64,000 bases of DNA from Amoebophrya sp. A120 (GCA_905178155.1 CAJINV010000001.1:7485506-7549505); one strand, 5' to 3'; shown: positions 34,376-62,740, counted from the stretch's first letter. Translations and numbers: made by a program. Notes: generated by a model from the sequence alone, not told the origin.

Positions 34376-37300
34376 ATGTCCTTCTGCGCCACGGACTGGA
34401 CCTGTTACTCGGAGGCGGGGATTTTCCTCCTCCCATGCTACGTGTTCCTCCTCTTCGCCTTCCCCCTCCGCTACTACGAAGTCAAGCTCTCTGCCCGGTG
34501 CGCCACACCAGGGAAGATGCCGCGTCTGCACATCGCCAAGCGGGTTCTGGTGGTGGTGCTTGCCTGCCTGTCCGCGCTGATCGGGGCCGTGTATCTGGCT
34601 TTCGTGGGCCTGAACTCCGCTTCAGCAGACGACAACGGGGTTCTTGTGTATTCCGCGGTTCTACACGGCGTATGTTACGCTTGCGCCTTCCAGCTGCTCA
34701 AGGAGGAGTACCAGCGGTATCTACCGCAAACCTGGATCGGCTTGCGAGGCCTCTGGTTCGGCAGCGGCATCGAGGGCTTGCTGCGATTCTTCTGGTACCT
34801 CAGCCTCAGCGACTATGGGTTCCTGGAAGTGTACGGAATCAGAGTGGAGGAACCAGACGGGCAGCCGCTGGGAAAAGCGAGCGCCACGACTGGTTTCGAT
34901 AGTATGTCGGCAGCGCCATGGCGGGAAAATTTTGCCAGGAGCGAGAGCGCAAATCTGCTGGACGCTCGGTTGTACAAGCTTTTTTCGGGGGGAGCAGCAT
35001 TTCTTCCTCGTGACGACCTTGTATCTACTTCGTCATCGGTTTCAGTACCTCCACAACCAGAACCACACAGCATGCTCACAAAAGTCGTGGACCATTCTTC
35101 GAGCGGTTTAGAAGATCACACCAACTACGACCACCTCCGTCACAAAACCCTATCGCACAACCTGGACCTCCCGCAGTACGATCACCTAGCTTTCTTACAT
35201 TTCCTGTTCGAACTCTCTGCCCTGATCTTCGGGGGCTGCCAAGTGATTCTGATGTTCCTGTCCTTCTGGGCCCACGACCTGCCGGTCGACGCCTTGCTGT
35301 TACAAAGCTTGCTGCCGGTGGATGACGAATTCTGGACCCGGTACGTGGACAAAGCCAGACGCGCCGAGCAACCGCACGCTTCCGTGTTTGGCGCCGAGCA
35401 GGAGGATTTTGACGTTCTTGCCACTTACCAGCCACCCGATCTCTTGCTGCCGCACCCGCGCGGAACTTCCGCCGTGTCCAGTCCGACCGCGGGGTTTCGG
35501 CACCAAAATTCGAATTCGTATCTGCGAGAGCTGCAAGTAAATAACCCAGCTGTAGCACAGAATTCCTACTCCGTGGTTTCGGTATCCCGAGCAGCTGGTG
35601 CTGTTCCAAACACAGCAACAGCCGAGCAGGCGGGGGTTGCAAAGTGGACGATTCTGGTACTTCCTATAACCGAGAGCACGACAAGCAATTCCGGCAACGC
35701 GGAAAATCAACAAGATTCGTCTCCCTACGCGTCGAGTGTGAAAAGCTGGGAAGAGGTGCGGCAAGTTCGGGAGGAGCTGAAGCGCACCTTTGGTACCCAC
35801 CCATTTTGGGCCTGTCGGATACCGTACCTCGCGTCACGCCCAGAACAGTACAGGGGCGAGGAAGCCCGGGCGTTGGAGGAATGGTTGCGACTAGTTGTGG
35901 AGCTCTTTCTGAATCAAATGGTGCAGCTGCACTCCTCTAGTACAACGTCCGGATTGCTGCTGCAGGGACCACCCGGTAGTGCGACCGCCACCCCGGTCTT
36001 TCCTAAACCAGGGCAGAGCTTTCGTTTTCACCGAAGTGCTTCTCGCGGCTCCGCTGCAAATTCCCCCGCAACTTCGATCACGCCTTTCGACTACAGACTC
36101 GGTACGGCTGGGGCTGCTGCTGGTGGCGCATTTCTCTTGCAAAAAACGCGGTTCCTATTCGACTTCTTTGGTTTGCCCTTTCCAGAGACAGTAGTTTCCG
36201 CCGCAGCGAACGACATGCAGAGAATAGAGAAAGTCGACGAAAATATCGGGTGGACCTTCGATAAAAAGGGGAATCGAACGGGCCTAAGTATTAACACGGC
36301 CTTGTCTCCTCCTCCAGAATCACCTTTGACTCAGGTCGGCGCGCCCTATTATGAAATCACCATCCCGCGGTTCGAGCTCGTGCAAAAGGGCGGCTACGTG
36401 GCCTACAGCATTCACATCATCGTCCAGGGCGCGGAGCTTCTTTTGGGCGGAGGTTCTTCTTCTGGCGAGAAAACTTCTCTGCAACCGCCAAACAAAGTCA
36501 CTGTCCACGCGGTCTCGCGACGCTACCGGGAGTTTGCGGCGCTCGAGACGACTCTGCAGTACCATTTGATGCGGATCAGGACCGCGGTCGTACAAAAACT
36601 GCCTCCTCTGCCCGCCAAAATGCGTTCCGTTTTGCGCAAGGACTACTCCTTTTTGCAGCGGCGCCGCGCGGATCTCGAGCGGTGGCTGCGTAGCGTCGTG
36701 ACGCATGCGGAGCTGTGCGACCACGACGCCGTGCGAGAATTCCTGCTGACAGAAGACCCGGCAGCGACGTTGGTCACTACGGAAGTAGACGATCACCCAA
36801 CGTTGAGTTTCGCAGAACAAGAATTAATGATCCCGCGCCTCTGGTCCCCCCTCTCCCGCGGCCACTCCGACACGCCGGTCTTCCATCTGCCGCGCAGCGC
36901 GGTTCTGCGGCGCGGACGCAGTCTGGACGCGTCTCCGAGTTTCACGAAGGAAATCGAGGGCGCCTCGTTGCCGAGCCCGCGGGGCAGTGGCACAAATCTG
37001 GTCGATCACGATTCCTCGGACTCCGTCGGGTCACCCCACCCGTCTGTCAGTGCCTTCGAACACGACCCGACGTCTTCAAAGGACACAAACAATTTGATCA
37101 AAGACAATCAGACTGTCGGAGGAGACAAGATGGCAAGCAAGACCCAGGACATCATGGGCGGAAACACCAGGGAGGAGCACACGGATAATTCCTTTCCTAC
37201 AGCTGCTTATGTGGAAGGTTGGGAACCACGCACGGACAACATGAACCAGCAGTACTATTCATACGGCATTCGTTTGGAAACTGATGCCGGCGCAAGTTGG

Positions 37301-37549
37301 ATGGTGCATCGACGTTTTCGCGATTTCGTTCACTTGCTATCGCAACTCCAGACCCACGCCGGCAGCGAGATCTGCGAACTGCTGTTACCGCCCTTACCGC
37401 CGAAATACCACGTTTTGGTAGACCCGACGCCCGAACAGAGGGCGCCAGCGCTGGAAAGTTTCCTGCAGCAAGTGCTGTCCAGTGAGAACGCGCTGTACTT
37501 TTGTCACTGCGAAGGACTCAAAAACTTTCTGCAGGTGCCGAAAAGATAG
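34376..37549 (+). CDS. Multi-pass membrane protein with two clear (possibly three) PX domains
   Basis: N-terminal 4-5 TMs. PX signatures VSRRYREFAALETTL...LPPLPAK...RRADLERWL and VHRRFRDFVHLLSQL...LPPLPPK...RAPALESFL. A degenerate PX-like unit lies at ~35640-35900. Confidence 0.8.
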   Translation: MSFCATDWTCYSEAGIFLLPCYVFLLFAFPLRYYEVKLSARCATPGKMPRLHIAKRVLVVVLACLSALIGAVYLAFVGLNSASADDNGVLVYSAVLHGVCYACAFQLLKEEYQRYLPQTWIGLRGLWFGSGIEGLLRFFWYLSLSDYGFLEVYGIRVEEPDGQPLGKASATTGFDSMSAAPWRENFARSESANLLDARLYKLFSGGAAFLPRDDLVSTSSSVSVPPQPEPHSMLTKVVDHSSSGLEDHTNYDHLRHKTLSHNLDLPQYDHLAFLHFLFELSALIFGGCQVILMFLSFWAHDLPVDALLLQSLLPVDDEFWTRYVDKARRAEQPHASVFGAEQEDFDVLATYQPPDLLLPHPRGTSAVSSPTAGFRHQNSNSYLRELQVNNPAVAQNSYSVVSVSRAAGAVPNTATAEQAGVAKWTILVLPITESTTSNSGNAENQQDSSPYASSVKSWEEVRQVREELKRTFGTHPFWACRIPYLASRPEQYRGEEARALEEWLRLVVELFLNQMVQLHSSSTTSGLLLQGPPGSATATPVFPKPGQSFRFHRSASRGSAANSPATSITPFDYRLGTAGAAAGGAFLLQKTRFLFDFFGLPFPETVVSAAANDMQRIEKVDENIGWTFDKKGNRTGLSINTALSPPPESPLTQVGAPYYEITIPRFELVQKGGYVAYSIHIIVQGAELLLGGGSSSGEKTSLQPPNKVTVHAVSRRYREFAALETTLQYHLMRIRTAVVQKLPPLPAKMRSVLRKDYSFLQRRRADLERWLRSVVTHAELCDHDAVREFLLTEDPAATLVTTEVDDHPTLSFAEQELMIPRLWSPLSRGHSDTPVFHLPRSAVLRRGRSLDASPSFTKEIEGASLPSPRGSGTNLVDHDSSDSVGSPHPSVSAFEHDPTSSKDTNNLIKDNQTVGGDKMASKTQDIMGGNTREEHTDNSFPTAAYVEGWEPRTDNMNQQYYSYGIRLETDAGASWMVHRRFRDFVHLLSQLQTHAGSEICELLLPPLPPKYHVLVDPTPEQRAPALESFLQQVLSSENALYFCHCEGLKNFLQVPKR

Positions 37550-38399: not shown

Positions 38400-41300
38400 A
38401 TGAAGGCAGGCGGTGGTGGGCCCGGGGTAAGGAAAAGCGGCGGCGGCAAGCAAAGTGGTGGCGGGGGCAAGCAAGGCAGCAATGGCGGCAAGCAAGGCAG
38501 AGGAGGGGGAAAGCAGGGCAACAATGCGAGTAAGCAAGGCGGCAGTTCTGGGAGCAAGCAAGGGGCCGGCGTAGGAGGCCAATCGTCAAGCTCAAAAAAT
38601 TCCAACAAGGGCTCCTCGGGCTCAGGAACCAACAAAAGCGGCGGAAAGGCTCAGTTTCAATCAGGGAAAGGCAAGGGGATCTGCACGTCCTTCGCCCAGA
38701 CCGGAACGTGCAAATACGGCGCTAACTGCAAGTTTCAGCACATTTCTCAAGGTGGATCTTTCACCGGTTCACGTGGTGCTACTGCTCAGGGGGGCACAAG
38801 CAATAACTACTTTGGTTCCACCGGCGCTGCAAACGCTGCCTCGTCCGCTGACAGTCGGCGTTTCCTGAAGCAGCTGCACGCCACCAACGATCCGGAAAAG
38901 CTCGCATTGCAGATCCAGAATTGTGGCACATACTGGGAGCAGTGCTGGGCCGATGCAGGGACCAGCGGTTTTTCCTTCCGCGACCTCCACCTCCTGGCGC
39001 ACGTGTTCGCCAGAATTCCCTACTCCAAGACGGGTGAGATTTCGCCGCCGCCACTGAATGACTGGACAAAGGTCATGATCAAGTTTCTCCAGACCGGCAT
39101 CAAAGCGGATGAGCCACTTGTCAGCTTGGTCGAAGTCGTTCTCAACGTCGTGAAAAAAATGCTCGAATTTGAATGGGAAGAGGAGAAGGGCGTGGTGCAG
39201 ACAGCTCTGCAGGATGTTTTGGAGGAAGCTGAGAGACCGCTCTCGCGACGGGAAAAAGACCAAAAAAGCGCCAAGGATCGCATCTCGGACCTGGTCGATG
39301 AACTACAGGAGAAGGAATGGATGATCAAGATCGCCAACAAAGCAAAGAAGGCCGATCTGGGCAATGCAGCTGCTCCGAGCAGTAGCAATTTCGCTTCGGC
39401 AGAAGAAGAAGAAAAAAAACCGTTGGACTATAAAGACTGGCCGATAGCGACAGTAGACTGGCTCTGCACGGCAAAGTTCTTTACGCCAACGGCTTTACCT
39501 GCAATGCAGGTGCCAGCGTCGCGCTCCAAAGGAGTGTACGCAAGTCGGGACCAATACCTGGACACGACTCAAAAATTGATGGTTGCTATGGCATTCTCGG
39601 AAGGCCATGGTGCCTTGGCTCCAAGATGCTGGGAGAAAGATGCTCAGGGAATGTCTTGCCAGGCAACCCTCTGGCCGGTTTCGGAAAAGACGGGAAGTGG
39701 GGCGGGTAACAAACGCTGCCGAACTCGAAACTGCACAGGTCAGGTTGTGCTAGCTTGCAAAAATCAGTACCACAACCACGGTCTTTGCGGACGCTGCGCC
39801 GCGCAGGAAAAGGCCCGAATCCTGGGCGCAGCAGGCATGCACGCATCCACCCACGTGTACGATGGTCGCGTATGGCGCGTGGATCCGGTGTCTGGAAAAA
39901 TTTTCGTAGAGCGATTTGCTTCCCGAAAGCCGCCCACCGAGCGCGCTGTGCACTGGAAGAGCACGAAGCGCCTCTCCTCGCCCAATCTGGTAGGGGTAGT
40001 CAAGCTCGGGAATCGGGCGAACCCTGGGAGCACGTTTACGGGCCGCGCGCTTCGTGGAAGTGATGCCATTCATTGGGGCGAGGTGGCAAACCACGGGATC
40101 CCGAAGGACGAATTCAGAGAGCGTGAGAAGGGCAAAGTCTGCGTCAACATGACTTCGATCACTCGCAACTTTGACCCGGAGGCCATCTGCGAGGGCGATG
40201 TGGTCGCCATCATCGACTGCATGACGTTTGTCCCGGAGTACGTTCCAGTTTTGCGCGCTCTCGATTTACAAGCTCAAGAAACTTTGCCCTTTCAGGACGG
40301 TTCCATGCTGAATCTGAATGCGGAGCGCCCAGCCGACACCACAAACTGCGTGTCCCGGGAGGCTTTCGCCGCGTACGCCACGGGAACGGTGCCTCAAACA
40401 GTCATTCGGCAGCACGTGAGCAACATGATTTCCGACAGCACTCTTCAGCCAATTCGCGAAATCCGGCAGGACATTGCTCTCTCAAATCAGATGGAAAACG
40501 AGATCACGACACTGGTCGAGCAAACGACGTTGGACCAGGGACAGCTCGTGAACTTTCTGGATAGCATGCGGAATGCCGTCCACCTGACGCAAGGACCACC
40601 GGGAACGGGAAAGTCGTACTTGGGAGTTGTGATTGTCCGGGCCTTGATGATCGTGCGAAAGTTCTGGGTGCGCAAGAACCCGTCGGTGGGCCAACCTCCG
40701 ATTTTGGTACTGTCCTACAAGAACCACGCGACGGACGAGTTTTTACTGGACCTGATCAAAGCCGAAAAGCACGCACTTGCCCCCGCCTTTCAGCGGCGCG
40801 GAGGACGCGGTGCGAACTACAATCTAATTCGCATGGGCAACACAGACGAGCCGACTCTGGCGCCGTATTGCGAGCGATGGCAGGCACAACAATCGAGCGG
40901 CCGGCTGTTGCAGTGCAAAAATCAGATGCAGCAGTTGAACGATTTGCGGAAAGCGTGTAAAGCAGTGTGCAAGTCTGCGTTACTTTTCAAAAGCTATCAC
41001 AGTGACATGTTCATCACAAACAGCGATGGTCGCCGTGAAGACGAGGCGCAAGCCAGAAAACGGCAACAGCGTGCGGCGTACGAAGCGACCGAGGTGCTGT
41101 TCGCGAGCATCGTGCGGGCTCGGCGACTACAGGAAAACTTTTTGCAGGAAGATCCCAGTTCCTCTGTTCCTCCTCCGAAGAAAAAGCGCCGGCGGCGCAT
41201 GAACAGCTTTGTGTCCATGTCATCAGATGAATCCGACGATGATATTGAGATGCAGGACGCACGCGACGACGGTCCTGATATAGAAGAGCGGCTCGACGCG

Positions 41301-44300
41301 ACCGCGAGGTTTATGACACTGGACGATGAGTCAGACACGCGCTTCCGCCAGCTGCAGAAGACTTCGAAGCTATTCGAAATGCAAGAGGATTTGCACGGAC
41401 TGTACGACGGACTAGCGCACTACATCGCGCTCGATCCTGCCAAGTATGAGGACCCGCACGAGCTGTTGCACATGTTTCTCGTCGGCACGAGGCCGTATCC
41501 AGCGTGCACGTATGAAAATTGTCGCGAACTGTCCTTGGATCACGAAGTAACGCTGTGTAACGACCACCGTTGCCACCTTCCGATTTTTCAAGCCGACGGG
41601 AGCAAGTTGCGGTGCTCGAAACCCCGCGACCCTCTGAAGCAGTATCTGTGTGCCGACCATGCTTGCCAAGCCGATTATTGCCAAAAGCCGCGTTTTAGGA
41701 TGGACGGCCAGGAGTGGCTGTGCGAGTCCTGCGTTTGCTTCCAATGCGTGAAACTGGGTATCGTACCGGCGCAGTGGGCTTGGGACGAGCCGCCGCGCAA
41801 CGTGTGTGAGAATCACAGGCTGTGCACTCTGCCGGATTGCCAGGAGCTGGCGCTTCCGGACGCTGACCACTGTGAGCTGCACTCGCGACCCAGATGCCAG
41901 TACCGGAAGCTGGGCGGGTGGGGCTTCCAGTGTGCGGAGGCTGCGATTTCTCGCGATTTTCCGTACTGCCGAGCGCACATCGATTTTTTTGCATCCGAGG
42001 AATCCCCAGAGCTGAAAAGTGCTGGTCCTGGTGCAGGAGCCGGGTCTCAAGAAGTGGAGCTCGAAGCAGCGATCCAGCTGAACAACGAGAAGCGAAGGTG
42101 TGCGGGCAAAACCCGGAAGGGTAAGGAATGCAGGTCCTGGGCCGAGCCAAATTCGGACTACTGCCATGCGCATGCGCCTCTTGTGGCGAAGGCTGTAGTA
42201 AACAGTGATCCAAGCTGCACAGGGGAGCGGAACCAAATCGATTCGCAGCCGGCGCACTGTGAACCCACGTTAACTTCGAACACTGCATCAAAGTCTACCA
42301 CTGCGCCGGATTCGGCACTGCCAACTGGTGCCGACGATGGATTTGCAACACCACGGAGCGGCGTTTCTGAAGCGGACAAAACCGAGGACCTCCTGCAGGA
42401 AGTTGCCGGGCCCGCTCCCGCACAGTCCCTGGGACCAGCCGGGAGCGCCACAGAAATTCCACCACCTTTCCCCGAAGCTGCAGTCGAGGAAGGTAGTGAT
42501 GTTGACGAAGAGGCACATTTTCGGCCACCGCCAGGGCTTGACCGCGCCGACATGGGGATGGGCAACGACAATCCGGATGAGGCAGAGGAAGCCGATGGAT
42601 TGCAGCACCTTCGCGAGGTGTACGATTTTGAGGAAAATGACGCCAGTGACGCATTCAACAATATAGGCGAGGACGATCCGTGGAGTGCCTCCGGTGCCGC
42701 CCCAGGGATGAACGAGGGGTTCCAGGAAAGTGAAAATAAACAAGGTACTTTTACAAATGATGTGCAAGAAGATGCTACTTTGCCGCGCCACTGCTGTTGT
42801 CATGCAAAAAAGTCGCGAATCGGCATCGAAAAACACTAAAACTACATGTTGAAGAGTCTGTATTAGTTTTTCTGCTGTAGGTTTTGTTACAACTTGCCAG
42901 GAGCCGGTCCGTCTTCGTCCGGGAGCCAAGGTTACGATGACAGCTCAGCAGTGCCGCCTCGGTCGCCTAAGCGAGAGACGCTGGAGAAGCGACCGCCGCA
43001 CGAATGGGCCTGGGACATGACCCTCGAGCAGCGTTGGGATGCGTGCCAAGACTTCATGTTCGGACAAATCGAAATTATGCAGGAGGTGCTCGAATGCGTA
43101 AAACAGCAACTGCCTGTCGCGCGGAAGCGCTTGCAGGAAGCGGACATCCGCACCAGGGCCAAAGTGTACGAGAACAAGACCGTGATCGGGGGCACCATCG
43201 TCGGATGCATTGCCCGCCTCGAGGCTATTCGGGCCACGCAACCGTTTGCCGTCATTGTCGAAGAGGCCTCGGAAGTGTTGGAGCCCTTACTCTTCTCGTG
43301 CCTGTGCCCGAGCACAACGAAGTTTGAGATGATTGGAGACCACCTGCAGTTGCAGCCGAGCCTGATGGACAAATTTGAATTTACCCTCGTGAACAAGATC
43401 AATGTCAGTATGTTCGAGCGCCTCATCCGCGCACCCCCGAATCACCAGGTGCCCAATGGCGTGCTGTCCATCCAGCGCCGTATGCGCCGGGATGTAGCGG
43501 ACCTCACGCGCGAGTACTACAAGGACATCGTTGCGATCCAGGACCACGAAGTATGCAGCACGAAAGTGATTCCCGGTTCCGACGCCCGGAAAAGCTTTTG
43601 GATGGGTCGCGAGATCCCTGGCGTGCAGTCGCACATCTATCTCTGGACGCACACCGGTGCACAGACCAAGGCCGAAGTGGGCATGAGCAAGATCAATCGG
43701 CACGAAGCAAAACTGATTGTGCACCTGGCATACTACCTGGTCAGCTGCGGCGTGAAGCGGGAGTCGATTGCCATTCTCACACCGTACAAGGGGCAGCTCA
43801 TGCTGTTGCGGAAAATGCTATTGCAGGACAAAACGAACGACCGCCTCCTGGCCTGGGACAACACGGCCAGGAACCAGGTGCGGTTGTCGACAGTCGACCG
43901 ATTCCAGGGGGACGAGGCGGATGTGGTGCTGGTATCCTTGGTGGTGGATGAGAAATCGAAAACGCCCTTCGTGAAATTGGTGAACCGCATGATTGTGCTG
44001 CTGTCCCGGGCCCGCCTGGGTATGTACGTTCTGGGCAACGTCGGGTACTTTGAAAACCGCAGCGGTGGCAGCGCTCAGAGCATCAAACACTGGATGCGGA
44101 CGTTCGAAATTTTGCAGCAGCCGGCGGAGACCTCGGACAACAGCTCCGACCGCAGCGTGCAGGTACAGCGAAAGGATGTCGAGAAAATGGGTTTGTCTCA
44201 AGCCTCTGCATCTGTACAGCAGGACTTGGAGCAGTTGCTCGCAGATGATGTTACCTGCGTGGACGTGAAGCTGTCTGGTGCTCGCTTCGACGGTGCGCGG

Positions 44301-47300
44301 GTTGGTGGTAAGCTTCCACTCTGCTGCCCACAGCATCCACTCGCGTCCCGCATCGAAGTCGAGAAACCGGAGGACCTGGCGTTGGGCTTTTGTGAGGTGG
44401 CCTGCGAGTACGTCTTGCCCTGCGGACACGACTGCGGGTTGAAGTGCCACTGGATGCAGAAAAAACACAACACGAAGTGCAAGGTCTCAGTGGACTCGCC
44501 GTGCGACAAGCACCCGGATCCGGTTTTGTGTCGCGACGTGTACCGAAATGCCCCCGGAGCGCGCCCGGACCAGGACGACATCGAGATTGCAAAAGAGAAG
44601 TACGCCTGTCCCGTCGACGTTTTGCTAGAACTGCCGTGCAGTCATGAGGAAAAGATGCCTTGTTTCCGGAAGGAGGCGATTTTGAGCGGCGGACTGAAGT
44701 ATCCCGATTGCAATCAGCCGTCGCCCAAACCGTATCTCTACCCATCGTGCGGGCACTCTCTTGCCGTGACTTGCGCCGAACTGTCGCGCTACGACAACCA
44801 CCCCTCGCAGGTCCCAAAGTGCGAGGAATCGGTGACCTACGTGCCGCAGGACTGCAATCACACCCGGTCTGTCCGCTGTTACCTTGAGCAACAATACAGA
44901 AGTGGGGCTGCGCTGTACACCTGTCCAGAAAAGGTCGACATTCTTCTGCCTCGCTGCGGGCACAACGCCAAAATGAGTTGCCAGCAAAGTGTCAAGCTCG
45001 CAAAATGGGAGCCCGGTCCTGGGAACGAGCGATGTTCTGAGGTCGGAGTTGTACGCGAAGGGGTTCGCTATGGTCCCAAGGATTACACATGCCGCGAGGA
45101 GGTGACGTTCGTCCGTGCATGCGGGCACGAGCAGAAGATGACTTGTGAAGCCGCGTTTCTCGCTGCAGAAAGGAAGCCTCCGTGCACGGAAAAGGTAGAG
45201 GTTACAAATCCGCATTGCGGCCACACCTGCGAAGTTGCGTGTGCAGAGGCGCAAAAATTGAAACATCTGAATATTCCTAATCCTTCGAGCGCGCCGCAGG
45301 ACGATCTGTGCGAGACCCGCGTGACGCCGTTTCCAACCACGTTGCCACGCGGCATGGAAAAGTGCAAACACCAGGTGAAGCTGCGAAGAAAGTGTGGCCA
45401 TGTCCAGGAAATGTCCTGTGCCGAAGCGCGACGGAGTCCCCTCAGCAAGTGCACTGCGACGGTGGAGATCCGTAGTCCGCTCTGTGGGCACGTGATATCC
45501 GTTCCTTGTCACCTGAAGAGTGCTGTGGAAGCGTGGCAGCCGTGGAGTGCAAGCGTCACGGAGGAATTGCAAGAACGTGAGGCACTGGTGCCGAACGCCA
45601 AGCCGCGGTGCTCGCTGCCAACTAACCAAGATGCGGTTTTGAAGATTCTCAAGACTTGCACAAAGAAAATCACAGTGGCCAAGAGCTGCGGACATACGTA
45701 CAAGGAATCGTGTAGAGAGCTGTTGACGATCGTGCAGGACGGTGGGCAAGTGAAAAAAGGTGACAGTTGTTCGGAGCTTGTGACGCGGACGTTACGGGAT
45801 TGTTCTCATGAGGTCACCATCCCCTGCAAGAAGTGGCAAAAGTATCAGGCGGGGCAGATTAAGATCGATTGCAGCACGGAGATTGTCGTCCCTTGCTGGA
45901 ATCAGTCTCGCTGTGGTCATACGGCCCTAAAAGTGAAGTGCTCCGAAAACACCGCTGGTCTCGTGTGTTGCGGCAAGGAGTCCTCTTGGCAGTGTCAGCA
46001 TGCGGACCAGCACGTTCATCAAGTTTCTCTTTGCTACCAAGGAGAGCCAACGATGTGCCCGACCTGTGACGATTCCGACCTCGACAAGGCCATCGCTTTA
46101 GCCCGGGCGCAGGCCGGTGAAAAACCGTTCACGGAGACACCTTATGCGCTGCTGAGAACTTCTACTTCTCGCTCCGTTCTCCGAAAAAAACAAGGAGGAG
46201 TGCGACAGGCCCTTTTCGGAACGCTGTTCAATCGACGAGGCGCAGAAGAGAGCTCTTGCCTGATCACGTCCTCGTTAACTTGCATCCACCCCCACAAAGT
46301 ACGGGACTTGCTGGCACTCGATGCGGATTCAAGATACTCGAACCTGAAGAAGTTTTGGGAGGAACAAGGATCCGTCTTGCAAAAGTGGAAAATGTGGCGG
46401 GAAAAGAATGGTCCAGCCGCACCCTTCGATCGAGAACTTTTTTCACCGAGTCTGATCCCAGTGTTTTTCGTCGTGTCGCAGGACAAGGGCGCCGAGGAGC
46501 AAGAACGGGGCTTCCTCAAACGGAGTAACTTTGTGCGAGGAAAGACCTTGGGTGGGATCGCCCTCCACCGGCTTACCAAAGACAACATTGCTACCGTTGC
46601 TCATGTCGCGAAAGGGTCTACGCCCAAGAAACTGCTGTGTGGGTATTTGTACACTGTAAAAGCGACAACCGATGAAAAGTGGCCGACGAAGCAGGGCACC
46701 AAAGACCTGGTCAAAAAGTGGCGCGAAAAGGAGGGCTGTGACACAGTCGAGTTCGCAGTAAAGGACACCACCGAACCGCGCAAACTCATAACATGGGACC
46801 CGTGTGCTCTCTACGCGACACACTGCCTTGGTCCGCTGAGCCACGAAGAACTGTGTGACTGGGCCGAAGATATCGACTTGAATCACCACGAGGAGTTGGA
46901 TGCAACGGATTTGAAGCCCCGGAGGATTGACTTTGTGGCCCCCGGGGTCGAAAGTCAAAAGATTACAATCGGCAAGGTGCAATCTCCAAAAGACGAGGAC
47001 GGCGAACTATCGCATACGAGCAGTAGTAGTGCGGCTGTCGGAAAGCCAGCCCTTGAGACGTCAACCCCTCTGAACATTCTCCGCGACACTTGGGCAGCGA
47101 CGGTTGCGTTCCCAACCTCGGCAGCAGCGGGAAATGAGGAGGACGTGTTAGGTCTGAAGAATGTCCTGTCGGGCGTCGCCGAAACAGAACTCAAGAAAAA
47201 GCTGCAGTTTATTAACGCCGACGCGGAGATCTTCGCGGGCAAGAAACTGCTTGAAACAGTGCTAGGTAAAAAAGCGAAAGGCAAGAAAAACAAAACCGGC

Positions 47301-50300
47301 GAATCACTGACCGGACACCTGCTGGCTGCGCTGGAGTTTGACGTGTTGGACGACGCCGATCGCGCCACTATGGAACTCGAGCAGTACTGCACCGAACTGC
47401 GGCAAAAAGGCGACCCCGCGCATCCACTCCTGCTCCTCGCGTTTGCCCGCATCGGAATGGTGAGTGTCATTGGAGCAGCAGAATTAAAATCGACATCAAA
47501 CGTTGACGCAGACCAACTGCTGCACACGTTCTATTCCCGGTATCCGGGAATGGCCGAGATGTTGCTCACGCCAGACGAGAAAGAAACTGCCCAGCAAGTA
47601 AAGGATGACAGTGCAGCGCAGAACGATGAAACCAACCAAAGAGCCACTGGTACTCTGGCAAGCCCTGCGGACCAGTGGGAAGATGCGAAAGATACTTATA
47701 ACCTCAAGTCCGACGCTATGGACGAGCTTATTGCGCTGACGGGCCTGCGAAAGGTGAAAATTGCAGCACTGCAGCTCTTCAAGACCGGCCGCGTTTTCGC
47801 GGATATGGACGCCGCGAAGCGGAAAAAAAATGCGCCCTCGCTGAACTACGTCTTTCTGGGAAACCCAGGGACCGGGAAAACAACGGTGGCGCGGTTGTTT
47901 GCGCGCATTTTGCGAGATGCTGGGCTTCGGACCAAGACTAATTTCGAAGAGTGCAGCGCGCAGACGCTCAAGGAGGAGGGCGTTGACGAGTTCAAGAAGA
48001 AAGTGCAGAATGCTATGGACGGGGTGCTGTTCATCGACGAAGCTTACAATCTGGACCCGATGGGTGACAGATTTAAGGGCGGCCCCATTGCCAACGAACT
48101 GCTGACCTTTTCCGAGAATGAGCGGGAGCGGCTGTCCTTCATCCTGGCGGGGTACGAGGACGAGCTGAACGACAAGCTTTTCGCGTTCAACCCGGGTTTC
48201 AAGAGCCGATTTACCGAGGTGGTATTTGAAGACTTCGATGAGGACGAGCTTCTGTCCATTTGGAACCACCAGCGCGAAGACAGGGAATGGCGGGAGGCCG
48301 ATGACCGGCTGGGGAAGGTGGTCATCCGCCGGTTGGCCAAGCTTCGAGGTCGCAAGGGCTTTGGCAACGCGCGGGATGTGCGGAAGAGGCTGGATGAAGC
48401 CTGCAACCGTGCCATGAACCGCGACGAGGTTGACGCGAGCAACCTGGTAATCGAGATGACGGACGCCGTGGGCGAGAATCCGGTCTACAATGACAAGTTG
48501 CGCAAGCTGCTGAAGAACATCGAGAAAATGACGGGGTGGGCGAAGGTGAAAAAGGCCATGCAGGCTCTGGTGAAAACCTGCGGCGAAAACTACGACCGCG
48601 AGTTGAATGGGCAGGCGCCCCTGCCGGTGTTTCTGAACCGCATGTTTTTGGGAAACCCCGGCACCGGGAAAACCACCTGCGCCAAACTGTACGGGCAACT
48701 CCTCAAGGAATTGGGGTTTCTCTCCAACGGGGAGGTGGTGGAAAAAACGGCTGGCGACCTCGGTGGTGCGGTCGTGGGCGAGGCGAAGCAAAAGACCGTG
48801 CAGCTGCTGGAGTCGTGCCGCGGAAAAGTGTTGCTCATCGACGAGGCCTACGGGCTAGACGACGGCCTATACGGGAAGCAAGCCCTGGACGCCCTAGTCG
48901 AGAAGGCGCAGGGCACCGAGGCGGACGACATTGCGGTGCTGCTGCTCGGGTACGAAGAGCAGATGCTGACCATGCTGAAAAACCAGAACCCCGGGCTGAG
49001 TCGCCGGTTCGCGCCGGAGCAGGCCTTCTACTTCGAGGACTACACGCCACCGGAGCTTGACGCGATTCTGATGCAAAACTGCAAAGATCAGCAGTATCGT
49101 CCCAGCATGGAGTTCCGCGAAAAGGCGAAGAAGAAACTTGAACGGCAAAAGCGCAGCGAAGCCTACTTCGGCAATGCGGGCGCGGTGAAAAACCTGCTGA
49201 AGGCCGCCTTGACTAAAGCCTCTGCGTCTCGGAAATGCGAGGCAGACGGCACCATGAAGCTGCTTCCCGAGGACATTGAGATGCCGGAAGACGAGTTTGC
49301 AGGAACGGATCCGTTTGAAGAGCTGGACAAGTTGTACCGAATGGACAAAGTGAAAGAGACGCTCCAGAAGGTCAAGAACCAAGTCGATCTCGCGGAGCAA
49401 GAAGGCGACGCACGGCCGGATCTTGGCCACTTCGTTTTCGTTGGCGCACCGGGAACCGGGAAGACCACGGTGGCCCGCATCATGGCCCGGTTGCTGTACC
49501 GCTCAGGATTCCTGGCCCGCGAGACGGTGGTCGAGACCACCGGGCAGAACCTCACCGGCGAGGCCGTCGGCACCACCAAAAAGAAGGTGGAGGACGAGCT
49601 GGACAAAGCCCGAGGCGGGGTGTTGTTCATCGACGAAGCGTACGAACTGGGCAAGAGCATGTACGGCTCCGAGGCCTGTTCCGCACTTGTTGCTGCTATG
49701 ACCAGTGAGAAGTACGCTGGCTTGGTGATCGTTTTCGCGGGCTACCAGTCGGAAATGCAAAAAATGCTCGACACCAATCCCGGGCTCAAAAGCCGGTTTA
49801 AGCATTTCCTGGAGTTCCCCGATTGGGATGCCGCAGACTGTCTGGATCTGCTGCAAAAGCGCGCTGTCAAGGAGAGTTATGCAATGGAAGACGCCGCAGC
49901 TGTCGATCGTGTCCTGGAGAAAGGCTTCGAGAAGCTGCGGAAGTTGGCAGGCTGGGGAAACGCTCGTGATGTCGACAGTGTTTGGAAAGAAATGCTTGCG
50001 CAACGCGCTGATCGTCTCGCGGGATGCCCGGACGACGGGCGGCCAGAGCGTACGTTGCAGACTGACGACGTCAAGACTGCGATCGAAAACCTCATCAATA
50101 TTCGGATGGGGAACGTATCCTCGGGCGCCTCTTCCGCTTCGAACGCGGATCCGTTTGCGCCGCTGGATAACCTTTATCGCATGAGTCTCGTAAAGGAAAA
50201 ACTGCAGGGAATCAAACTTCGCGCTGAAATGGCCTTGAAAGACGGCGAGGACCCGCCGCCGCTTGGGCACTTCGTCTTCTCTGGGGCGCCGGGGACGGGC

Positions 50301-52541
50301 AAGACCACAGTCGCGCGCGTGATGGCGGACATCTTGGCGAGACTGCAACTCATTGGACGCAATAACGTTGTTGAGACGTCTGGTCTTGAGCTTACCGGCG
50401 AATTTGTTGGTCACACGAAGAAAAAAGTCGAAGAAGAGCTGGACAAAGCAAAAGGAGGCGTTCTGTTCATTGACGAGGCTTACGAGCTCGGAAAAGGGCA
50501 ATTCGGAACCGAAGCGGTCACGACACTGGTTGCCGCAATGACAGATCCGGCGTACGCGGGCCTCACCATCGTCTTTGCGGGATACCAAGCCGACATGTTC
50601 AAAATGCTTGACGCCAACATCGGACTCAAGTCTCGCGTGAAACACTTTATCGAGTTTCCAGATTGGACTGCCGACGATTGCAGTCACCTGTTTTACAAAA
50701 TGGTGACGGACAAAAGTTTCGAATTAGATTCCGACCGCACGAAACCGCTTCTCTTGAAGGGCTTCAAAACTGTCATTCCACTCAAAGGTTGGGGAAACGC
50801 GCGCGACGTGCACAAATTTTGGGATGCTGTAATGGAAAATCGAGCCACGCGAGAAAACGTGACACCCTCGGGAGAAGGGACAAAGATTATTGCCGTGGAC
50901 GACGTGAAACTTGCAATGAACAGCTTTGTGGCGGAGCGACAGGGAACGTCCGCGAATACAAAGAAACTTTCAGCAGACCCATTTGCCGCTCTCGACGCCT
51001 TGTATCGCATGGACGATGTGAAGAAAGTTTTGCAGACGCTGCGCGACGCATACGAGATAGCAAGCGTGGATGGCGTAGATCCGCCACCGCTGGGCCATTT
51101 CGTTTTTGACGGCTCTCCCGGCACCGGAAAAACCACCGTGGCGCGGGTCATGGCCGAAATTCTGGCCAGTCTTGGTTTGATTGCGCGCGGACACGTGGAA
51201 GAGACGTCGGGACACAAAATGTGCGGCCAGTACGTAGGCGAGACCAAAAATGTCGTTAAGGATTACTTGAATCGCGCCCAGGGAGGGGTATTATTCATCG
51301 ACGAAGCATACAGTATGGGACGCGGGCAGTTCGGCAAGGAGGCGGTGGACTCTCTCGTGGAGGCCATGACGGATCCTCAGTACGCGGGCGTCGTCGTGGT
51401 CATCGCCGGCTATCCCAGAGACATTAGTGACATGCTGGATTGCAACGCGGGGCTCAAGAGCCGGTTCACTCATAGACTGCCATTTCCAGACTGGGCCCCG
51501 AAAGATTGCGTGGAATGCTTCAAGAAAAAGGCGGCAACGAAGGAATTTCAGCTCGAAGCCGGGGTGGAGCAGATTCTCTTGCAGGGCTTCAAGGTTCTCT
51601 CCCGGCTCGGTGGATGGAGCAACGCGCGGGACGTCGGGGGGTTGTGGGACGCTGCGTACAGGGAGCGTGCCGCAAGATCGAAGCAGACCGGAGATACGAA
51701 CAAACTTCTCACCAAGTCGGACATTGATAAGGCACTCCGTTCGAAAATCGATGACCGAAAGGCGGGAACTGACCAGAAAAGCATGTTGGGAGGACGAGCA
51801 GCCGGTGACGACGATGAATCCGCTCCGGTACGGATGGTTGACAGCAGTGCGGCGCCATCTTCGTCGGGGCAAGTGCAGGACCGCGACCAAGACGTGGAAA
51901 ACAAAAATGAGCGGGAGGAGTGCGCAGAGCAGCAGTGCGAACTGGAACTCGAGGAGGTCTTGCTAGACGACGTGTCGGGCGACGGGGGGAATGGCGGCCT
52001 CGATCCTGTGTGCACGCCAGTCGCCGAGCGTGACCCCGGTGTCTCTGATGAGGTTTGGAACGAGCTCCAAGCCGCAAAAGAAGAGGAAGAGCGGTATGCT
52101 GCTGAGCTGGCGGCTAAAGAGGAGGAGCGGAAACGAATCGAAGCGCAAATCGAGGCAGAAATGCGCGCAAAACAGGTACTCGTACTTCATATTCAATTTT
52201 CGGCATTTGCTTTGCTGGTTTGCATCGAGCAAAACCCAGATATGTTTTCTCTCTTAGTACCCGACCTAAACACAGAACCAAACATGATCGATGGTGCAAT
52301 TGCATAATAACAGCTCGCCAAAGAAGCTTACGAAGCGAAGATGCGGGAACTGGAGCGATTGCGTGCGGAGGAAGAAGCGAAACGCCGTGAGCGGGAACGA
52401 ATTATGCAGAAGCTGCGCAAAATTGGAAATTGCCCTATGGGTTTTGTTTGGTACAAAACGGGCGGAGGGTGGCGCTGTGCAGCAGGGGGTCACTTCGTCA
52501 GTGACGCGCAATTGCACCGCGATTTTTCGATGCCATGCTAG
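38400..52541 (+). CDS. Giant ZNFX1-like SF1 helicase / NF-X1 zinc finger / 5x CbbX-type AAA+ protein (~4,615 aa); exons 38400-42744, 42901-52175, 52314-52541
   Basis: GT-AG introns 42745-42900 and 52176-52313 join three ORFs in phase (13,848 nt). Motifs: CCCH finger, QGPPGTGKS, LSYKNHA, VEEASE, IGDHLQLQP, SMFERL, QRRM, ILTPYKGQ, TVDRFQGDEAD, VLLSRAR, many PCGHxC repeats, five GxPGTGKT/IDEAY modules, terminal CPMGFVWYKTGGGWRCAAGGH. Confidence 0.9.
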
Positions 52542-61463: not shown

Positions 61464-62740
61464 GATGGTGCCCGGGCTTGAAGAAGTTTAGTTTGTTCCC
61501 CCCGGATTAGAGGAACTTTTTTTGTTGAGCACTTTGTTTCACGGGAACCTCACGATTATACGGAAGAAGTTTGTAGTTTTACGCTAGCGCTACATGCGTA
61601 TTTTCACACATATAAGGATATCTACTATAATCGAACATACTTACATTGGGAATGAACGACAGCACGCACCGCGGGGACAGAGCTGGGCTTGACAGCTTAT
61701 TCCTGCGAAGCATGCTTGATTTTTGGAAGAAGTACGCAGCGCGTTTGAATAAACGGGTCCACGGGCATGTGCCATCTAATATCGAACTGCCCCCTCCAAT
61801 TATATGTCTGTGTGTAGATGGGAGGGTGATTTTCTTTTTTTCGAGGACAATTGATATTCCGCAAGCAACGTGTGCAGAGAATAGTTGTACTTCCTGCTAC
61901 AGTAATGTCGACGCCCACATTGAAACGTGGAGCATTTTTGTGGAAATAAAACGCTAAAGATGCGCTGCGCCGCAGTAGACGGGTTGTGAAAATTTGCCCG
62001 ATCACGCACTGACACTTTGTCGAGTTCCTTTTCCAGTGCCCCTGACGAGCCGTTCTCCGCGGACAGAATGTCGCATCTGTGCATCCGCCTTATGATCTGG
62101 TCAGAAGAACAGAATATCGTTGAGATCAAGCGCAAGGAGACGATCTACAAATCCCAGGTTGAACCAATTCGAGATAGAAATTATCTGCAAGATACATCCG
62201 TTCGATCCTCAGTCATTTCCCTCAGTGATGTCCGGTCGCGGAAGCAGCTGCACCTAAATCTTTCGAAAAGGATCAATTTGACGGTCGTGTGACGGAGGCG
62301 AAAGTGCCAAGTCATTGTCTTTGAGGTTCTGGTGGGGCCGTGCCGCTGCTGACGATACTTTCTGACGAGATCGATAATCCGACCTGATCCTCTTCCGTTT
62401 TCGGTTTCCGAAGTTGACGAAAATGATCCAGAGTTTCTCCGTCGGTTCTGAAACACGTCGGTCCGATGACTTTCCGCATTGAAATGAATGGAAACCGATC
62501 TTCGTCCTGAAGCAATGCGGAACGCATGAAAAATTTTCACTTTTCAGATGGATACCAGGCGTGGTTTAGATCTTGAAAACGAACACAAAAATAACGGACT
62601 GTGCCCTTGGAGTTCAGCACTTTCCTGCCCAGCTTCATGCAATTGTTCTGCTTTTTTCCTGAATGCGAGTCTGTCTATCCCCTACTTAAAAATATGCTGC
62701 GACCGATTTTGGTTTTTGATTTTGAAGTGGAACATTGAGT

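What the first reader, a model, noticed from the sequence alone, without database searches (positions are those of the whole stretch)
38400..52541. ~4,600-aa single-chain machine: CCCH + ZNFX1-type helicase + NF-X1 fingers + five tandem AAA+ ATPases + C-terminal Cys/His motif
Seen: two phase-compatible GT-AG introns join the 1479-, 3137- and 66-aa ORFs into one protein. It has a full set of SF1 helicase motifs (EEA-type Walker B, as in ZNFX1), ~570 aa of PCGH-type fingers and five AAA+ modules with intact Walker A and B. Established: animal ZNFX1 is an RNA-sensing helicase in antiviral defence and small-RNA inheritance, and RNF213 is a giant immune protein with a tandem AAA+ ring. I recall fungal ZNFX1-like proteins carrying three CbbX-type AAA domains and a similar C-terminus, with no known function. 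Inference: an RNA sensor coupled in cis to a pseudo-oligomeric AAA+ motor, a candidate protist anti-virus or anti-transposon system. I do not know a five-AAA version.
Basis: partly seen in the sequence, partly recalled or inferred. Interest (0 to 1): 0.88.

Follow-up and report, generated by a model that had tools for sequence, protein, structure and literature searches.

The report
Giant ZNFX1-like helicase with five AAA+ modules
The three reading frames form one real gene of the parasitic dinoflagellate Amoebophrya, encoding a 4,615-residue protein that joins a ZNFX1-type RNA helicase to five ATP-driven remodelling modules; it belongs to an old, widespread and never-studied eukaryotic family, so it is neither unique to this genome nor shown to be an immune device.

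Summary
The ORFs 38400-42839, 42894-52307 and 52341-52541 join through in-phase GT-AG introns (42745-42900, 52176-52313) into a 4,615-aa protein. Homology supports both joins. The ZNFX1-type helicase core is split between ORF1 and ORF2. Junction 2 is gapless against orthologues and matches a deposited 914-aa model. No RNA read of this organism could be laid.

The protein has a CCCH finger, an SF1 helicase closest to ZNFX1 (EEA Walker B), a 590-aa ZNFX1-like zinc-knuckle stalk and an unidentified alpha/beta plus helical region. Five CbbX/EccA-type AAA+ modules, a coiled coil and a conserved C-x14-C-x4-H mini-domain follow.

The genome is Amoebophrya sp. A120. Co-linear orthologues of 3,400-4,400 aa occur in oomycetes, diatoms, dinoflagellates, Rhizaria, chytrids, cnidarians, diplonemids and Amoebozoa, with three, four or five AAA modules. 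Public five-module versions exist. The modules fall into three ancient, differentiated classes. Only the third keeps the CbbX pore-loop aromatic, and only it was duplicated.

The protein lacks the RZ finger, so it is not a ZNFX1 orthologue or an RNF213 analogue. The most likely role is an RNA-coupled protein or RNP remodeller. A defence role is untested.

The parts
38400..42744 (+). Exon 1 (residues 1-1448 plus the first base of codon 1449). It holds a Gly/Lys/Gln-rich N-terminal tail, the CCCH finger, the N-terminal helical and 1B regions, helicase motif I and most of insertion 1C.
   Evidence: ORF and frame. Co-linear homology to full-length orthologues.
38682..38741 (+). CCCH zinc finger (residues 95-114).
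   Evidence: Pfam zf-CCCH, E 2.6e-07, above the cut-off. N-terminal CCCH fingers recur in orthologues P0006, P0021, P0033 and P0047.
40593..40616 (+). SF1 helicase motif I / Walker A, GPPGTGKS (residues 732-739).
   Evidence: Aligns to ZNFX1 9q9z motif I.
41487..42269 (+). Family-specific Cys/His cluster inside helicase insertion 1C (residues 1030-1290). It consists of repeated C..C..(Y/F)C..H units.
   Evidence: Sequence. Conserved in the family consensus. No Pfam hit.
42564..42641 (+). Conserved acidic island in insertion 1C, NDNPDEAEEADGLQHLREVYDFEEND (residues 1389-1414).
   Evidence: It is the only conserved block in an otherwise variable stretch. It recalls the acidic plug helix of ZNFX1 (bioRxiv 10.1101/2025.10.14.682297). 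Equivalence is not shown.
42745..42900 (+). Intron 1 (156 nt, GT..AG, in phase). It removes two in-frame stops.
   Evidence: A join is required by the split helicase. The exact boundaries are unverified.
42901..52175 (+). Exon 2 (residues 1449-4540).
43248..43271 (+). Helicase motif II, AVIVEEAS. This is the EEA-type Walker B, as in ZNFX1.
   Evidence: ZNFX1 has EEAA (bioRxiv 10.1101/2025.10.14.682297, read). Aligned.
43473..44051 (+). RecA2 lobe (Pfam AAA_12; motifs IV-VI).
44313..46085 (+). Zinc-knuckle stalk (residues 1920-2510). The first unit is NFX1-type-like. At least ten C-x(9-11)-C[GS]H-x(5-6)-C units follow, predicted as repeated beta-beta-alpha.
   Evidence: pLDDT about 80. The family-profile alignment to ZNFX1 runs on to chain residue 1450. 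An HMM of this region aligns to the fingers of an RZ-bearing ZNFX1-like protein, P0117. Pfam zf-NF-X1 does not hit, and it does not hit the control P0117 either.
46320..46952 (+). Conserved alpha/beta domain of unknown fold class (residues 2589-2799).
   Evidence: AF2 model pLDDT about 90, seven strands plus helices. Conserved in length and in patches across the family. No Pfam, PDB or PADLOC hit. A weak ESM-Atlas lead to Arr/DarT/PARP (0.83-0.85) is unsupported by HMMs.
47172..47705 (+). All-helical domain directly before AAA module 1 (residues 2873-3050).
   Evidence: AF2 secondary structure. Conserved motifs. The fold was not searched on its own.
47715..48494 (+). AAA+ module 1 (residues 3054-3313), class m1. 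Walker A, Walker B, arginine finger and sensor 2 are intact. It has no CbbX-type pore loop.
48510..49295 (+). AAA+ module 2 (residues 3319-3580), class m2. Sensor 2 reads GNAG instead of GNAR, the arginine finger is RRF, and the pore-loop aromatic position is Val.
49311..50108 (+). AAA+ module 3 (residues 3586-3851), class m3. The pore-loop aromatic is replaced by Ala.
50151..50942 (+). AAA+ module 4 (residues 3866-4129), class m3 duplicate. The pore loop has Phe.
50979..51761 (+). AAA+ module 5 (residues 4142-4402), class m3 duplicate. Its pore-loop Tyr aligns with GQYIGHT of CbbX.
52032..52175 (+). Conserved RDPGVSDxxWxELQ motif and the first half of the coiled coil.
52176..52313 (+). Intron 2 (138 nt, GT..AG, phase 0).
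   Evidence: The junction is gapless against P0001 and P0002 and identical in the deposited model CAD7925302.1.
52314..52541 (+). Exon 3. It holds the second half of the coiled coil, the C-terminal C-x14-C-x4-H mini-domain (52425-52529) and the stop codon TAG (52539-52541).
   Evidence: The mini-domain is an independent module found in 821 clusters, also as tandem arrays.

Best explanation
This is one three-exon, single-copy gene of Amoebophrya sp. A120. It encodes a 4,615-aa member of an ancient, pan-eukaryotic and experimentally uncharacterised protein family.

Shown: a ZNFX1-clade SF1 RNA helicase and its zinc-knuckle stalk are fused to a conserved alpha/beta plus helical region, an array of CbbX/EccA-type AAA+ modules, and a coiled coil ending in a C-x14-C-x4-H mini-domain. 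The fusion takes the place of the Miz and RZ ubiquitin-ligase modules of animal ZNFX1. The AAA+ modules belong to three ancient, differentiated classes. In this protein the third class, the one that keeps the pore-loop aromatic, is present three times.

Inferred working: the CCCH finger and the helicase bind and track single-stranded RNA, 5'->3' as in ZNFX1 and Upf1, possibly gated by the acidic island in insertion 1C. The rigid finger stalk holds the C-terminal half at a distance. The AAA+ array spends ATP to pull on or remodel a protein or RNP partner through the aromatic pore loops of the class-3 modules, while classes 1 and 2 serve structural or regulatory roles. The coiled coil and the terminal mini-domain would mediate pairing or partner binding.

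In short, it is an RNA-coupled protein/RNP remodeller acting in RNA surveillance, silencing or defence. Which of these three pathways it serves is not known.
For: Gene model.

Stalk.

Module count and motifs: five modules, all with intact catalytic motifs.

Class structure: three classes conserved from Dikarya to dinoflagellates. Class 1 lacks the pore loop, class 2 has GNAG, and class 3 has GEYVGQT like GQYIGHT of CbbX.

Duplications: they are confined to class 3 and are lineage-specific (oomycete clade 99*, diatom clade 99*). The A120 and AT5.2 modules m3, m4 and m5 are pairwise orthologous (97*, 97*, 93).

Family breadth and co-linearity.

Single copy.

Transcript-derived full-length homologues: Flectonema TRINITY ORFs, and ENA contigs of 13-15 kb that each carry one 3,990-aa ORF.
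Against: - No transcript of this gene was seen in this organism.
- More than 60% of A120 introns are non-canonical (PMC7789003), so the boundaries of intron 1 and the absence of further in-frame introns are assumptions.
- No substrate, partner or activity is known for any family member.
- A module number of 3, 4 or 5 does not fit a simple closed hexamer.
- Module 3 of this protein has lost the pore-loop aromatic.
- The alpha/beta domain could be an enzymatic effector, which would change the picture.
- The role of the pore-loop tyrosine in CbbX is taken from my knowledge of the literature, not from a tool.
Confidence: 0.6

Rival explanations
1. Defence reading. The protein is an innate-immune sensor-effector against viruses or transposons: foreign RNA recognised by the helicase triggers the AAA+ motor.
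For: - Animal ZNFX1 is antiviral, and C. elegans ZNFX-1 and S. pombe Hrr1 act in small-RNA pathways (papers read).
- The helicase half matches the bacterial defence helicase MkoA (E 3.5e-40).
- The phyletic distribution is patchy, with many apparent losses.
- The substrate-engaging module class expanded in separate lineages.
Against: - The gene is single-copy here.
- Orthologues are co-linear at 35-63% identity over about 4,000 residues across supergroups, with no sign of paralogue bursts.
- The MkoA match is generic to Upf1-like helicases.
- No recognised effector domain was found.
- Nothing here tests infection or transposon response.
Confidence: 0.3
2. Housekeeping reading. The protein is a conserved RNP remodeller in ordinary RNA metabolism, such as mRNA or ribosome quality control or granule disassembly. 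It would be of LECA age and was lost repeatedly.
For: - It is present in Amoebozoa, Opisthokonta, SAR and Discoba, with a constant domain order and constant spacer lengths.
- It is single-copy.
- The three AAA classes are conserved throughout the family.
Against: - It appears absent from most animals, land plants and yeasts among the hits.
- No characterised orthologue exists.
Confidence: 0.3
3. Switch or scaffold reading. The AAA+ array is not an unfoldase. It would be an ATP-sensing or oligomerisation switch, as in RNF213 or STAND proteins, that controls an enzymatic effector lying in the alpha/beta domain, possibly an ADP-ribosyltransferase-like fold.
For: - ATP binding to the AAA core switches RNF213 on (PMC12075652).
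- The ESM-Atlas nearest named clusters for residues 2500-3060 and 2585-2805 are Arr, DarT and PARP (0.83-0.85).
- Classes 1 and 2 lack pore-loop aromatics.
Against: - Atlas scores under 0.9 are often chance, by the tool's own statement.
- The DarT and Arr HMMs find nothing in this genome at E <= 10. The Arr HMM rang in one control genome and the DarT HMM in none, so only the Arr search had a working control.
- Pfam gives no hit at E <= 1.
- No H-Y-E or R-S-E triad is evident among the conserved residues.
- The fold of this domain could not be searched alone.
Confidence: 0.15
4. Separate genes. The helicase part, the AAA part and the 66-aa ORF would be independent genes, and the 'introns' would be intergenic spacers.
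For: - Stops are present at 42837 and 52305.
- The public annotation holds only a 914-aa model for the 3' part.
- No annotated model of 796-5,490 aa from this genome turned up.
Against: - ORF1 alone would carry only motifs I-Ia of the helicase, and ORF2 only motifs II-VI.
- More than 50 homologues are single chains across both junctions.
- The 914-aa public model itself splices intron 2.
Confidence: 0.03

Closest known systems
ZNFX1 (human ZNFX1, C. elegans ZNFX-1) and its fungal relatives Hrr1 and SAD-3
   Same: - It has an SF1 Upf1-like helicase with an EEA-type Walker B and an oversized 1C insertion. ZNFX1 is the best solved match by sequence, profile and fold.
- A zinc-knuckle stalk follows RecA2 directly and aligns at profile level.
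- RNA binding is probable.
   Different: - It has no RZ finger. This was tested with a positive control.
- A Miz-like domain is not identifiable.
- The stalk is about four times longer, with at least 11 knuckles.
- Insertion 1C carries its own Cys/His cluster.
- It has an N-terminal CCCH finger.
- About 2,100 extra C-terminal residues hold an alpha/beta domain, a helical domain, five AAA+ modules and a terminal mini-domain.
- It is a sister family, not an orthologue.
CbbX (red-type Rubisco activase) and EccA1 (ESX-1 secretion ATPase); Pfam AAA plus AAA_lid_6
   Different: CbbX and EccA are single-module proteins that form homo-hexamers. Here three to five differentiated modules are concatenated in one chain and fused to a helicase. 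The substrate is unknown.
RNF213 (mysterin)
   Same: It is a giant single chain that combines tandem AAA+ modules with Cys/His modules, and it is related to ZNFX1 by theme.
   Different: The AAA modules of RNF213 are dynein/midasin-like and form a fixed six-membered ring. Its defining E3 part (RING plus RZ) is absent here. The same genome has separate RNF213-like proteins with AAA_5/AAA_7 plus RZ.
Uncharacterised database orthologues: Amoebophrya AT5.2 g6771.t1, KAK3240587.1, Phytophthora 'NFX1-type zinc finger-containing protein 1' of about 3,900 aa, Hydra LOC100206283, chytrid proteins, and the short form in Aspergillus nidulans, AN7246
   Same: They share the same domain order end to end, at 35-63% identity and co-linear. 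The newer Pfam families PF26600 and PF26601 are precomputed on them.
   Different: The number of class-3 AAA modules is one, two or three. The Dikarya form lacks the finger stalk. None has a published function that I could find.
Mokosh MkoA (bacterial anti-phage helicase)
   Same: The RecA1-C and RecA2 halves match the MkoA profile (E 3.5e-40).
   Different: The match covers only the generic Upf1-like core. The rest of the architecture is not shared.

Membership tests
ZNFX1 helicase clade | Upf1-like SF1 core with motifs I-VI | tested here: met
ZNFX1 helicase clade | Deviant EEAx Walker B, and closer to ZNFX1 than to other SF1 helicases | tested here: met
   VIVEEAS at residue 1565. Family profile against ZNFX1 9q9z scores 265.6 bits, E 4e-78; against Aquarius about 100 bits and Upf1 about 94 bits.
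ZNFX1 helicase clade | NFX1-type zinc-finger stalk directly after RecA2 | tested here: met
   The profile alignment runs to residue 1450 of the ZNFX1 chain. An HMM of the stalk aligns to the fingers of the RZ-bearing P0117. The AF2 model shows repeated beta-beta-alpha knuckles. Caveats: Pfam zf-NF-X1 gives no hit (nor in P0117), and a single-sequence search against the PDB gives none. The solved coordinates of 9q9z in the fold library cover the helicase core only, so no structural test of the stalk was possible.
ZNFX1 helicase clade | N-terminal armadillo dimerisation domain | tested here: inconclusive
   The family profile gives only -2.1 bits to ZNFX1 residues 171-291. The region was not folded.
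ZNFX1 (orthologue in the strict sense) | C-terminal RZ finger (E3) | tested here: not met
   No PF20173 hit in any piece at E <= 0.1. The control P0117 gives E 8.6e-23.
ZNFX1 (orthologue in the strict sense) | Miz-like (SP-RING/U-box-like) E3 domain | tested here: inconclusive
   No Pfam hit in residues 2521-3096. A structural search of that region alone was not possible.
CbbX/EccA-type AAA+ (AAA plus AAA_lid_6) | Walker A, Walker B, arginine finger, sensor 2 and lid | tested here: met
   All five modules have them. In module 2, sensor 2 is GNAG, as in the whole m2 class.
CbbX/EccA-type AAA+ (AAA plus AAA_lid_6) | Aromatic pore-loop-1 residue | tested here: met
   Met in module 4 (Phe) and module 5 (Tyr, aligned to GQYIGHT of CbbX). 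Not met in modules 1-3.
CbbX/EccA-type AAA+ (AAA plus AAA_lid_6) | Closed hexameric ring | not testable with these tools
   The five-module array is 1,349 aa, above the 1,200-aa folding limit. No multimer prediction is on hand.
RNF213-like | Six dynein-type AAA units plus an E3 module with RING and RZ | tested here: not met
   The AAA modules are of the CbbX clade and there is no RZ. True RNF213-like loci lie elsewhere in the genome.
ADP-ribosyltransferase (Arr / DarT / PARP) | Match to a family profile and a catalytic H-Y-E or R-S-E triad | tested here: not met
   PF14487 and PF12120 find nothing in the genome at E <= 10; the PF12120 (Arr) search rang in one control genome, the PF14487 (DarT) search in none, so only the Arr search had a working control. 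There is no Pfam hit. Only Atlas scores of 0.83-0.85 point this way. No triad is evident among the conserved residues.

The most novel reading that the evidence does not exclude
The family would be a LECA-age, RNA-triggered protein-threading machine. It would be a sister solution to animal ZNFX1, in which recognition of aberrant or foreign RNA by the helicase is coupled not to ubiquitin ligation but to ATP-driven unfolding or extraction of RNA-bound proteins. The lineage-specific multiplication of the pore-loop-bearing module class (three copies in Amoebophrya) would tune its power. On this reading it is a conserved eukaryotic RNA-defence or silencing effector that no model organism has revealed.
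Probability: 0.2. Interest if true: 0.85.

Novelty: new variant of a known kind. Interest (0 to 1): 0.55.

Why it matters
ZNFX1 has just been shown to be an auto-inhibited RNA helicase that signals through two E3 modules. This gene documents a much more widespread sister architecture, in which the same helicase and stalk drive an array of CbbX-type AAA+ modules instead.

The array has a conserved internal division of labour. There are three module classes, and only the third keeps a substrate-engaging pore loop and is ever duplicated. That gives concrete and testable predictions.

Tractable orthologues exist in Aspergillus, Phytophthora, diatoms and Hydra, so the function of a roughly 4,000-aa protein conserved across most eukaryotic supergroups could be opened up.

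For Amoebophrya A120 the result also corrects the gene model. The only deposited model found here is a 914-aa fragment.

Tried and rejected
- RNA evidence. By the tool's own statement this is no test.
I could therefore not inspect the 13-15-kb contigs that carry the homologues.
- The search for homologous proteins with the middle region alone found nothing, because of the length window. With ORF1 it found only fragments from other organisms and no A120 model.
- Alignment A1 (a short query against full-length proteins) smeared the query across the alignment and was discarded. Longer anchored pieces were used instead (A2, A3).
- Fold searches of both AF2 models were filled by the AAA+ domain or the helicase domain. 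The alpha/beta domain, the helical domain and the stalk therefore remain unsearched by fold.
- The ADP-ribosyltransferase lead from the Atlas is not backed by the HMMs.
- Pfam zf-NF-X1 and a single-sequence PDB search gave no hit for the stalk. This is not counted against homology, because the ZNFX1-like control lacks the Pfam hit too.
- Introns 1 and 2 are not copies of the introner elements noted elsewhere in the window. Only a TTGTCATGC 9-mer is shared. There are no introner-like inverted repeats inside the coding sequence.
- The literature searches found no paper on the helicase-AAA fusion family.
All such calls were made exon by exon, by reference. The joined reading was made only inside scripts, to number residues and to compare with fetched homologues.

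Full report
OBSERVATION. The three ORFs are exactly as described: 38400-42839 (1479 aa), 42894-52307 (3137 aa) and 52341-52541 (66 aa), all in the same frame of the + strand. I listed every in-phase GT..AG pair around the two stops. The pairs with proper consensus are 42745-42900 (156 nt, AAG|GTACTT...TTGCCAG|G) and 52176-52313 (138 nt, CAG|GTACTC...ATAACAG|C). Removing them gives a 13,848-nt reading frame of 4,615 codons, about 511 kDa, with one terminal stop.

Those calls were made exon by exon, by reference. The joined reading was used only inside scripts, to number residues and to compare with homologues already fetched.

IS IT ONE GENE? Junction 1 is required by the helicase itself.
- Pfam AAA_11 is split: profile positions 17-177 lie in ORF1 and 167-255 in ORF2.
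- The two halves hit the same solved chain, ZNFX1 9q9z, in co-linear order (ORF1 709-803 to chain 683-770; ORF2 34-381 to chain 1007-1322).
- Full-length homologues align across it in a single segment, for example P0003 over model residues 226-4612 at 47% identity.

The junction lies in a non-conserved low-complexity stretch between two conserved blocks (...LQHLREVY... and ...PPHEWAWDMTLEQRW...). A join is therefore certain, but its exact boundaries are not.

Junction 2 is exact. ...AEMRAKQ|LAKEAYEAK... aligns without a gap to P0001 and P0002. A deposited protein of 914 aa is identical to the last 914 residues of the spliced model.

Direct RNA evidence could not be obtained.

For relatives there is transcript-level support.
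- Complete TRINITY ORFs of 3,744-3,976 aa from the diplonemid Flectonema carry the helicase, four or five AAA modules and the C-terminal motif.
- Nineteen near-identical ENA contigs of 13-15 kb each carry one 3,990-aa ORF.

ORGANISM. The 914-aa protein is CAD7925302.1 / GSA120T00002863001 of Amoebophrya sp. A120. The assembly size of 115.5 Mb agrees with the genome paper (PMC7789003). That paper reports that more than 60% of A120 introns are non-canonical, and that gene models were built from transcript and protein alignments. Two things follow. Further in-frame introns cannot be excluded, although no introner-like inverted repeat lies in the coding sequence. The public model probably rests on a partial transcript, since it starts at internal Met 3702. 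No public model of 796-5,490 aa from this genome was found. The full-length reading appears to be new for A120.

ANATOMY (residues of the spliced model; window coordinates are under 'parts').
- 1-90: a Gly/Lys/Gln-rich tail.
- 95-114: a CCCH finger (Pfam).
- About 150-700: conserved N-terminal and 1B regions, not identified further.
- 732: motif I.
- About 860-1500: a very large 1C insertion. It holds an NLS-like PPKKKRRRRM, a family-specific Cys/His cluster (1030-1290) and a conserved acidic island (1389-1414).
- 1565: motif II, VIVEEAS, the EEA variant that the ZNFX1 structure paper describes as EEAA.
- To about 1832: RecA2.
- 1920-2510: a stalk of zinc knuckles.
- 2589-2799: an alpha/beta domain.
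- 2873-3050: a helical domain.
- 3054-4402: five AAA+ modules.
- Then an acidic linker, an RDPGVSDxxWxELQ motif, a coiled coil and a terminal mini-domain (4578-4612).

An HMM built from 83 modules of the family finds exactly five modules and no degenerate sixth.

The profile alignment runs through to residue 1450 of the ZNFX1 chain, that is, into its finger stalk. An HMM of the stalk alone aligns to the finger region of P0117, a Mortierella ZNFX1-like protein that carries an RZ finger. The first unit (LPLCCPQH...CEVACEYVLPCGHDCGLKCH...) is NFX1-type-like. The later units are simpler C-x(9-11)-CGH-x(5-6)-C knuckles, predicted as repeated beta-beta-alpha at pLDDT about 80.

Pfam zf-NF-X1 does not hit. 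It does not hit P0117 either, so that absence says little.

WHAT IS MISSING. The RZ finger is absent. The Pfam model finds it in the control at E 8.6e-23 and nowhere here. A Miz-like domain could not be identified. The same genome has three RZ loci elsewhere. One lies in a 6,893-aa open frame. Another lies 374 kb upstream on the same contig, in an open frame that also has dynein-type AAA_5/AAA_7, that is, RNF213-like. The ubiquitin-type RZ chemistry is thus carried by other giants in this organism.

Across 20 family members the modules fall into three classes that are older than the family's radiation.
- Class 1 has no CbbX-type pore loop.
- Class 2 has GNAG instead of the sensor-2 GNAR, and an RRF finger, in every lineage.
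- Class 3 has the pore loop GE(Y/F)VGQT, which aligns with GQYIGHT of CbbX.

Only class 3 is ever multiplied. In an IQ-TREE analysis the two oomycete copies form a clade (SH-aLRT 99), and so do the two diatom copies (99). All non-myzozoan class-3 modules form a clade (99) that excludes the copies of the five-module proteins. Modules 3, 4 and 5 of A120 pair with modules 3, 4 and 5 of Amoebophrya AT5.2 (97, 97, 93).

The triplication therefore predates the split of these two Amoebophrya lineages, and four-module forms arose independently elsewhere. In A120 module 3 has lost the aromatic (Ala), while modules 4 and 5 keep Phe and Tyr. The distances from helicase motif I to module 1, and from the last module to the C-terminus, are nearly constant whatever the module number. 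The array really does vary from 3 to 5 units and is not a disguised hexamer.

C-TERMINAL MINI-DOMAIN. The motif CPxG(F/Y)xW...GGGWRCxGGxHFVSDxxL ends most family members. A search of 1.84 billion representatives with its 48 residues found 821 clusters at E <= 0.001. Many are fragments of this family. Others are helicase-only proteins with the motif, and still others are proteins made of up to 16 tandem copies of a roughly 60-aa unit (helix plus motif). It is therefore an autonomous small domain. Only two Cys and one His are conserved, so it is not a classical four-ligand finger. Its role is unknown.

MIDDLE REGION. Its length (about 530-600 aa) and several patches are conserved across the family. 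AlphaFold2, run with a 30-sequence alignment, gives a confident alpha/beta domain (seven strands) followed by an all-helical domain that abuts module 1. Fold searches with this 1,021-residue model were filled by AAA+ matches, so the fold of the middle region is untested. The ESM Atlas placed it nearest to Arr, DarT and PARP clusters, at scores of 0.83-0.85 that the tool itself calls leads only. The DarT and Arr profiles find nothing in the genome (only the Arr profile rang in a control genome), and Pfam finds nothing. I keep this only as a weak lead.

FAMILY. The first search returned 118 homologues. Co-linear proteins of 3,400-4,400 aa occur in these groups:
- oomycetes and diatoms (four modules);
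- Amoebophrya AT5.2, a protein deposited as Cymbomonas KAK3240587.1, Prorocentrum and a JGI contig (five modules);
- Flectonema (four or five modules);
- chytrids, Hydra, Clytia, Spongospora, Plasmodiophora and Mastigamoeba (three modules).

Dikarya have a 2,300-aa form with three modules, without the stalk. It also shows that the five-module form is neither unique nor new in the databases. The gene is single-copy in A120. Its helicase has only one distant paralogue at E <= 1e-10. I found no paper on this fusion family.

MECHANISM. Shown: the domain identities, the intact catalytic motifs, the class structure and the duplication pattern.

Inferred from the named families: RNA binding and 5'->3' tracking by the helicase, as for ZNFX1 and Upf1; a rigid spacer role for the stalk, as in ZNFX1; and ATP-driven pulling on a protein or RNP client through the class-3 pore loops, as CbbX does with the Rubisco large-subunit tail (this last point is from my knowledge of the literature). 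The coiled coil and mini-domain would serve pairing or partner binding.

I rate this RNA-coupled remodeller picture as the most likely reading, at about 0.45-0.5 for the mechanism itself. Identity and gene model stand near 0.9. Whether the pathway is defence, silencing or housekeeping quality control is open. The evidence for defence is by analogy only (ZNFX1 biology, a generic MkoA match, patchy distribution). The single-copy, co-linear conservation fits a conserved cellular role equally well.

VERDICT. The gene is a corrected, full-length member of a widespread but unstudied ZNFX1-sister family. The new biological content is the architecture logic: three AAA classes, expansion of the pore-loop class, loss of RZ, and an autonomous C-terminal mini-domain. 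The five-module count is not new. Interest is 0.55.

Noticed in passing
whole window (G000:C1:7485506-7549505): The genome is Amoebophrya sp. A120 (Syndiniales). An exact protein match gives CAD7925302.1 / GSA120T00002863001, and the 115.5-Mb assembly size agrees with PMC7789003. The only deposited model found for this gene is a 914-aa C-terminal fragment that starts at internal Met 3702.
   Followed up: yes
G000:C1:7111565-7111699 (L004:1800-9998, 374 kb upstream of the window); also G000:C5:1837036 and G000:C8:1110664: The genome has three RZ-type zinc-finger loci. The one on the same contig lies in an open frame of at least 2,733 aa with dynein-type AAA_5/AAA_7, that is, RNF213-like. The one on C5 lies in a 6,893-aa open frame.
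   Followed up: partly
window 52425-52529; P0119, P0120: The C-terminal C-x14-C-x4-H mini-domain is an autonomous module. It is found in 821 protein clusters, and some proteins consist of up to 16 tandem copies. It has no Pfam model in the local copy. One array gives a sub-threshold WWE_1 hit.
   Followed up: partly
window 42745-42900: Intron 1 contains TTGTCATGC, the 9-mer repeated in the introner-like elements noted at 15585-15945 and 61031-61292. Otherwise it shares no similarity with them, and it has no terminal inverted repeat.
   Followed up: yes
window 41172-41201: There is an NLS-like run, PPKKKRRRRM, inside helicase insertion 1C. It hints at nuclear localisation.
   Followed up: no
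window 34376-37549: The upstream same-strand 1,057-aa ORF encodes a PX-domain protein (E 3.7e-28) and is a separate gene. Other ORFs in the window include a DUF4116 protein (5063-9589) and a nitroreductase (62735-63868). The genes sit in a one-directional cluster, as described for this genome.
   Followed up: partly
P0003 (JGI contig of 13,870 nt): Its three class-3 AAA modules group with each other (SH-aLRT 95) rather than with the positional counterparts in Amoebophrya. This points to an independent triplication or to concerted evolution.
   Followed up: no
P0264 (KAK3240587.1): A 4,442-aa five-module orthologue is deposited under the green alga Cymbomonas tetramitiformis, yet it clusters at 90% identity or more with an unlabelled EukProt protein and sits nearest to Amoebophrya. 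The label may reflect contamination or prey DNA.
   Followed up: no
P0317 (Phytophthora kernoviae): A Fido and ankyrin protein matches ORF1 at 52% identity over 9% of its length. The shared piece was not examined.
   Followed up: no
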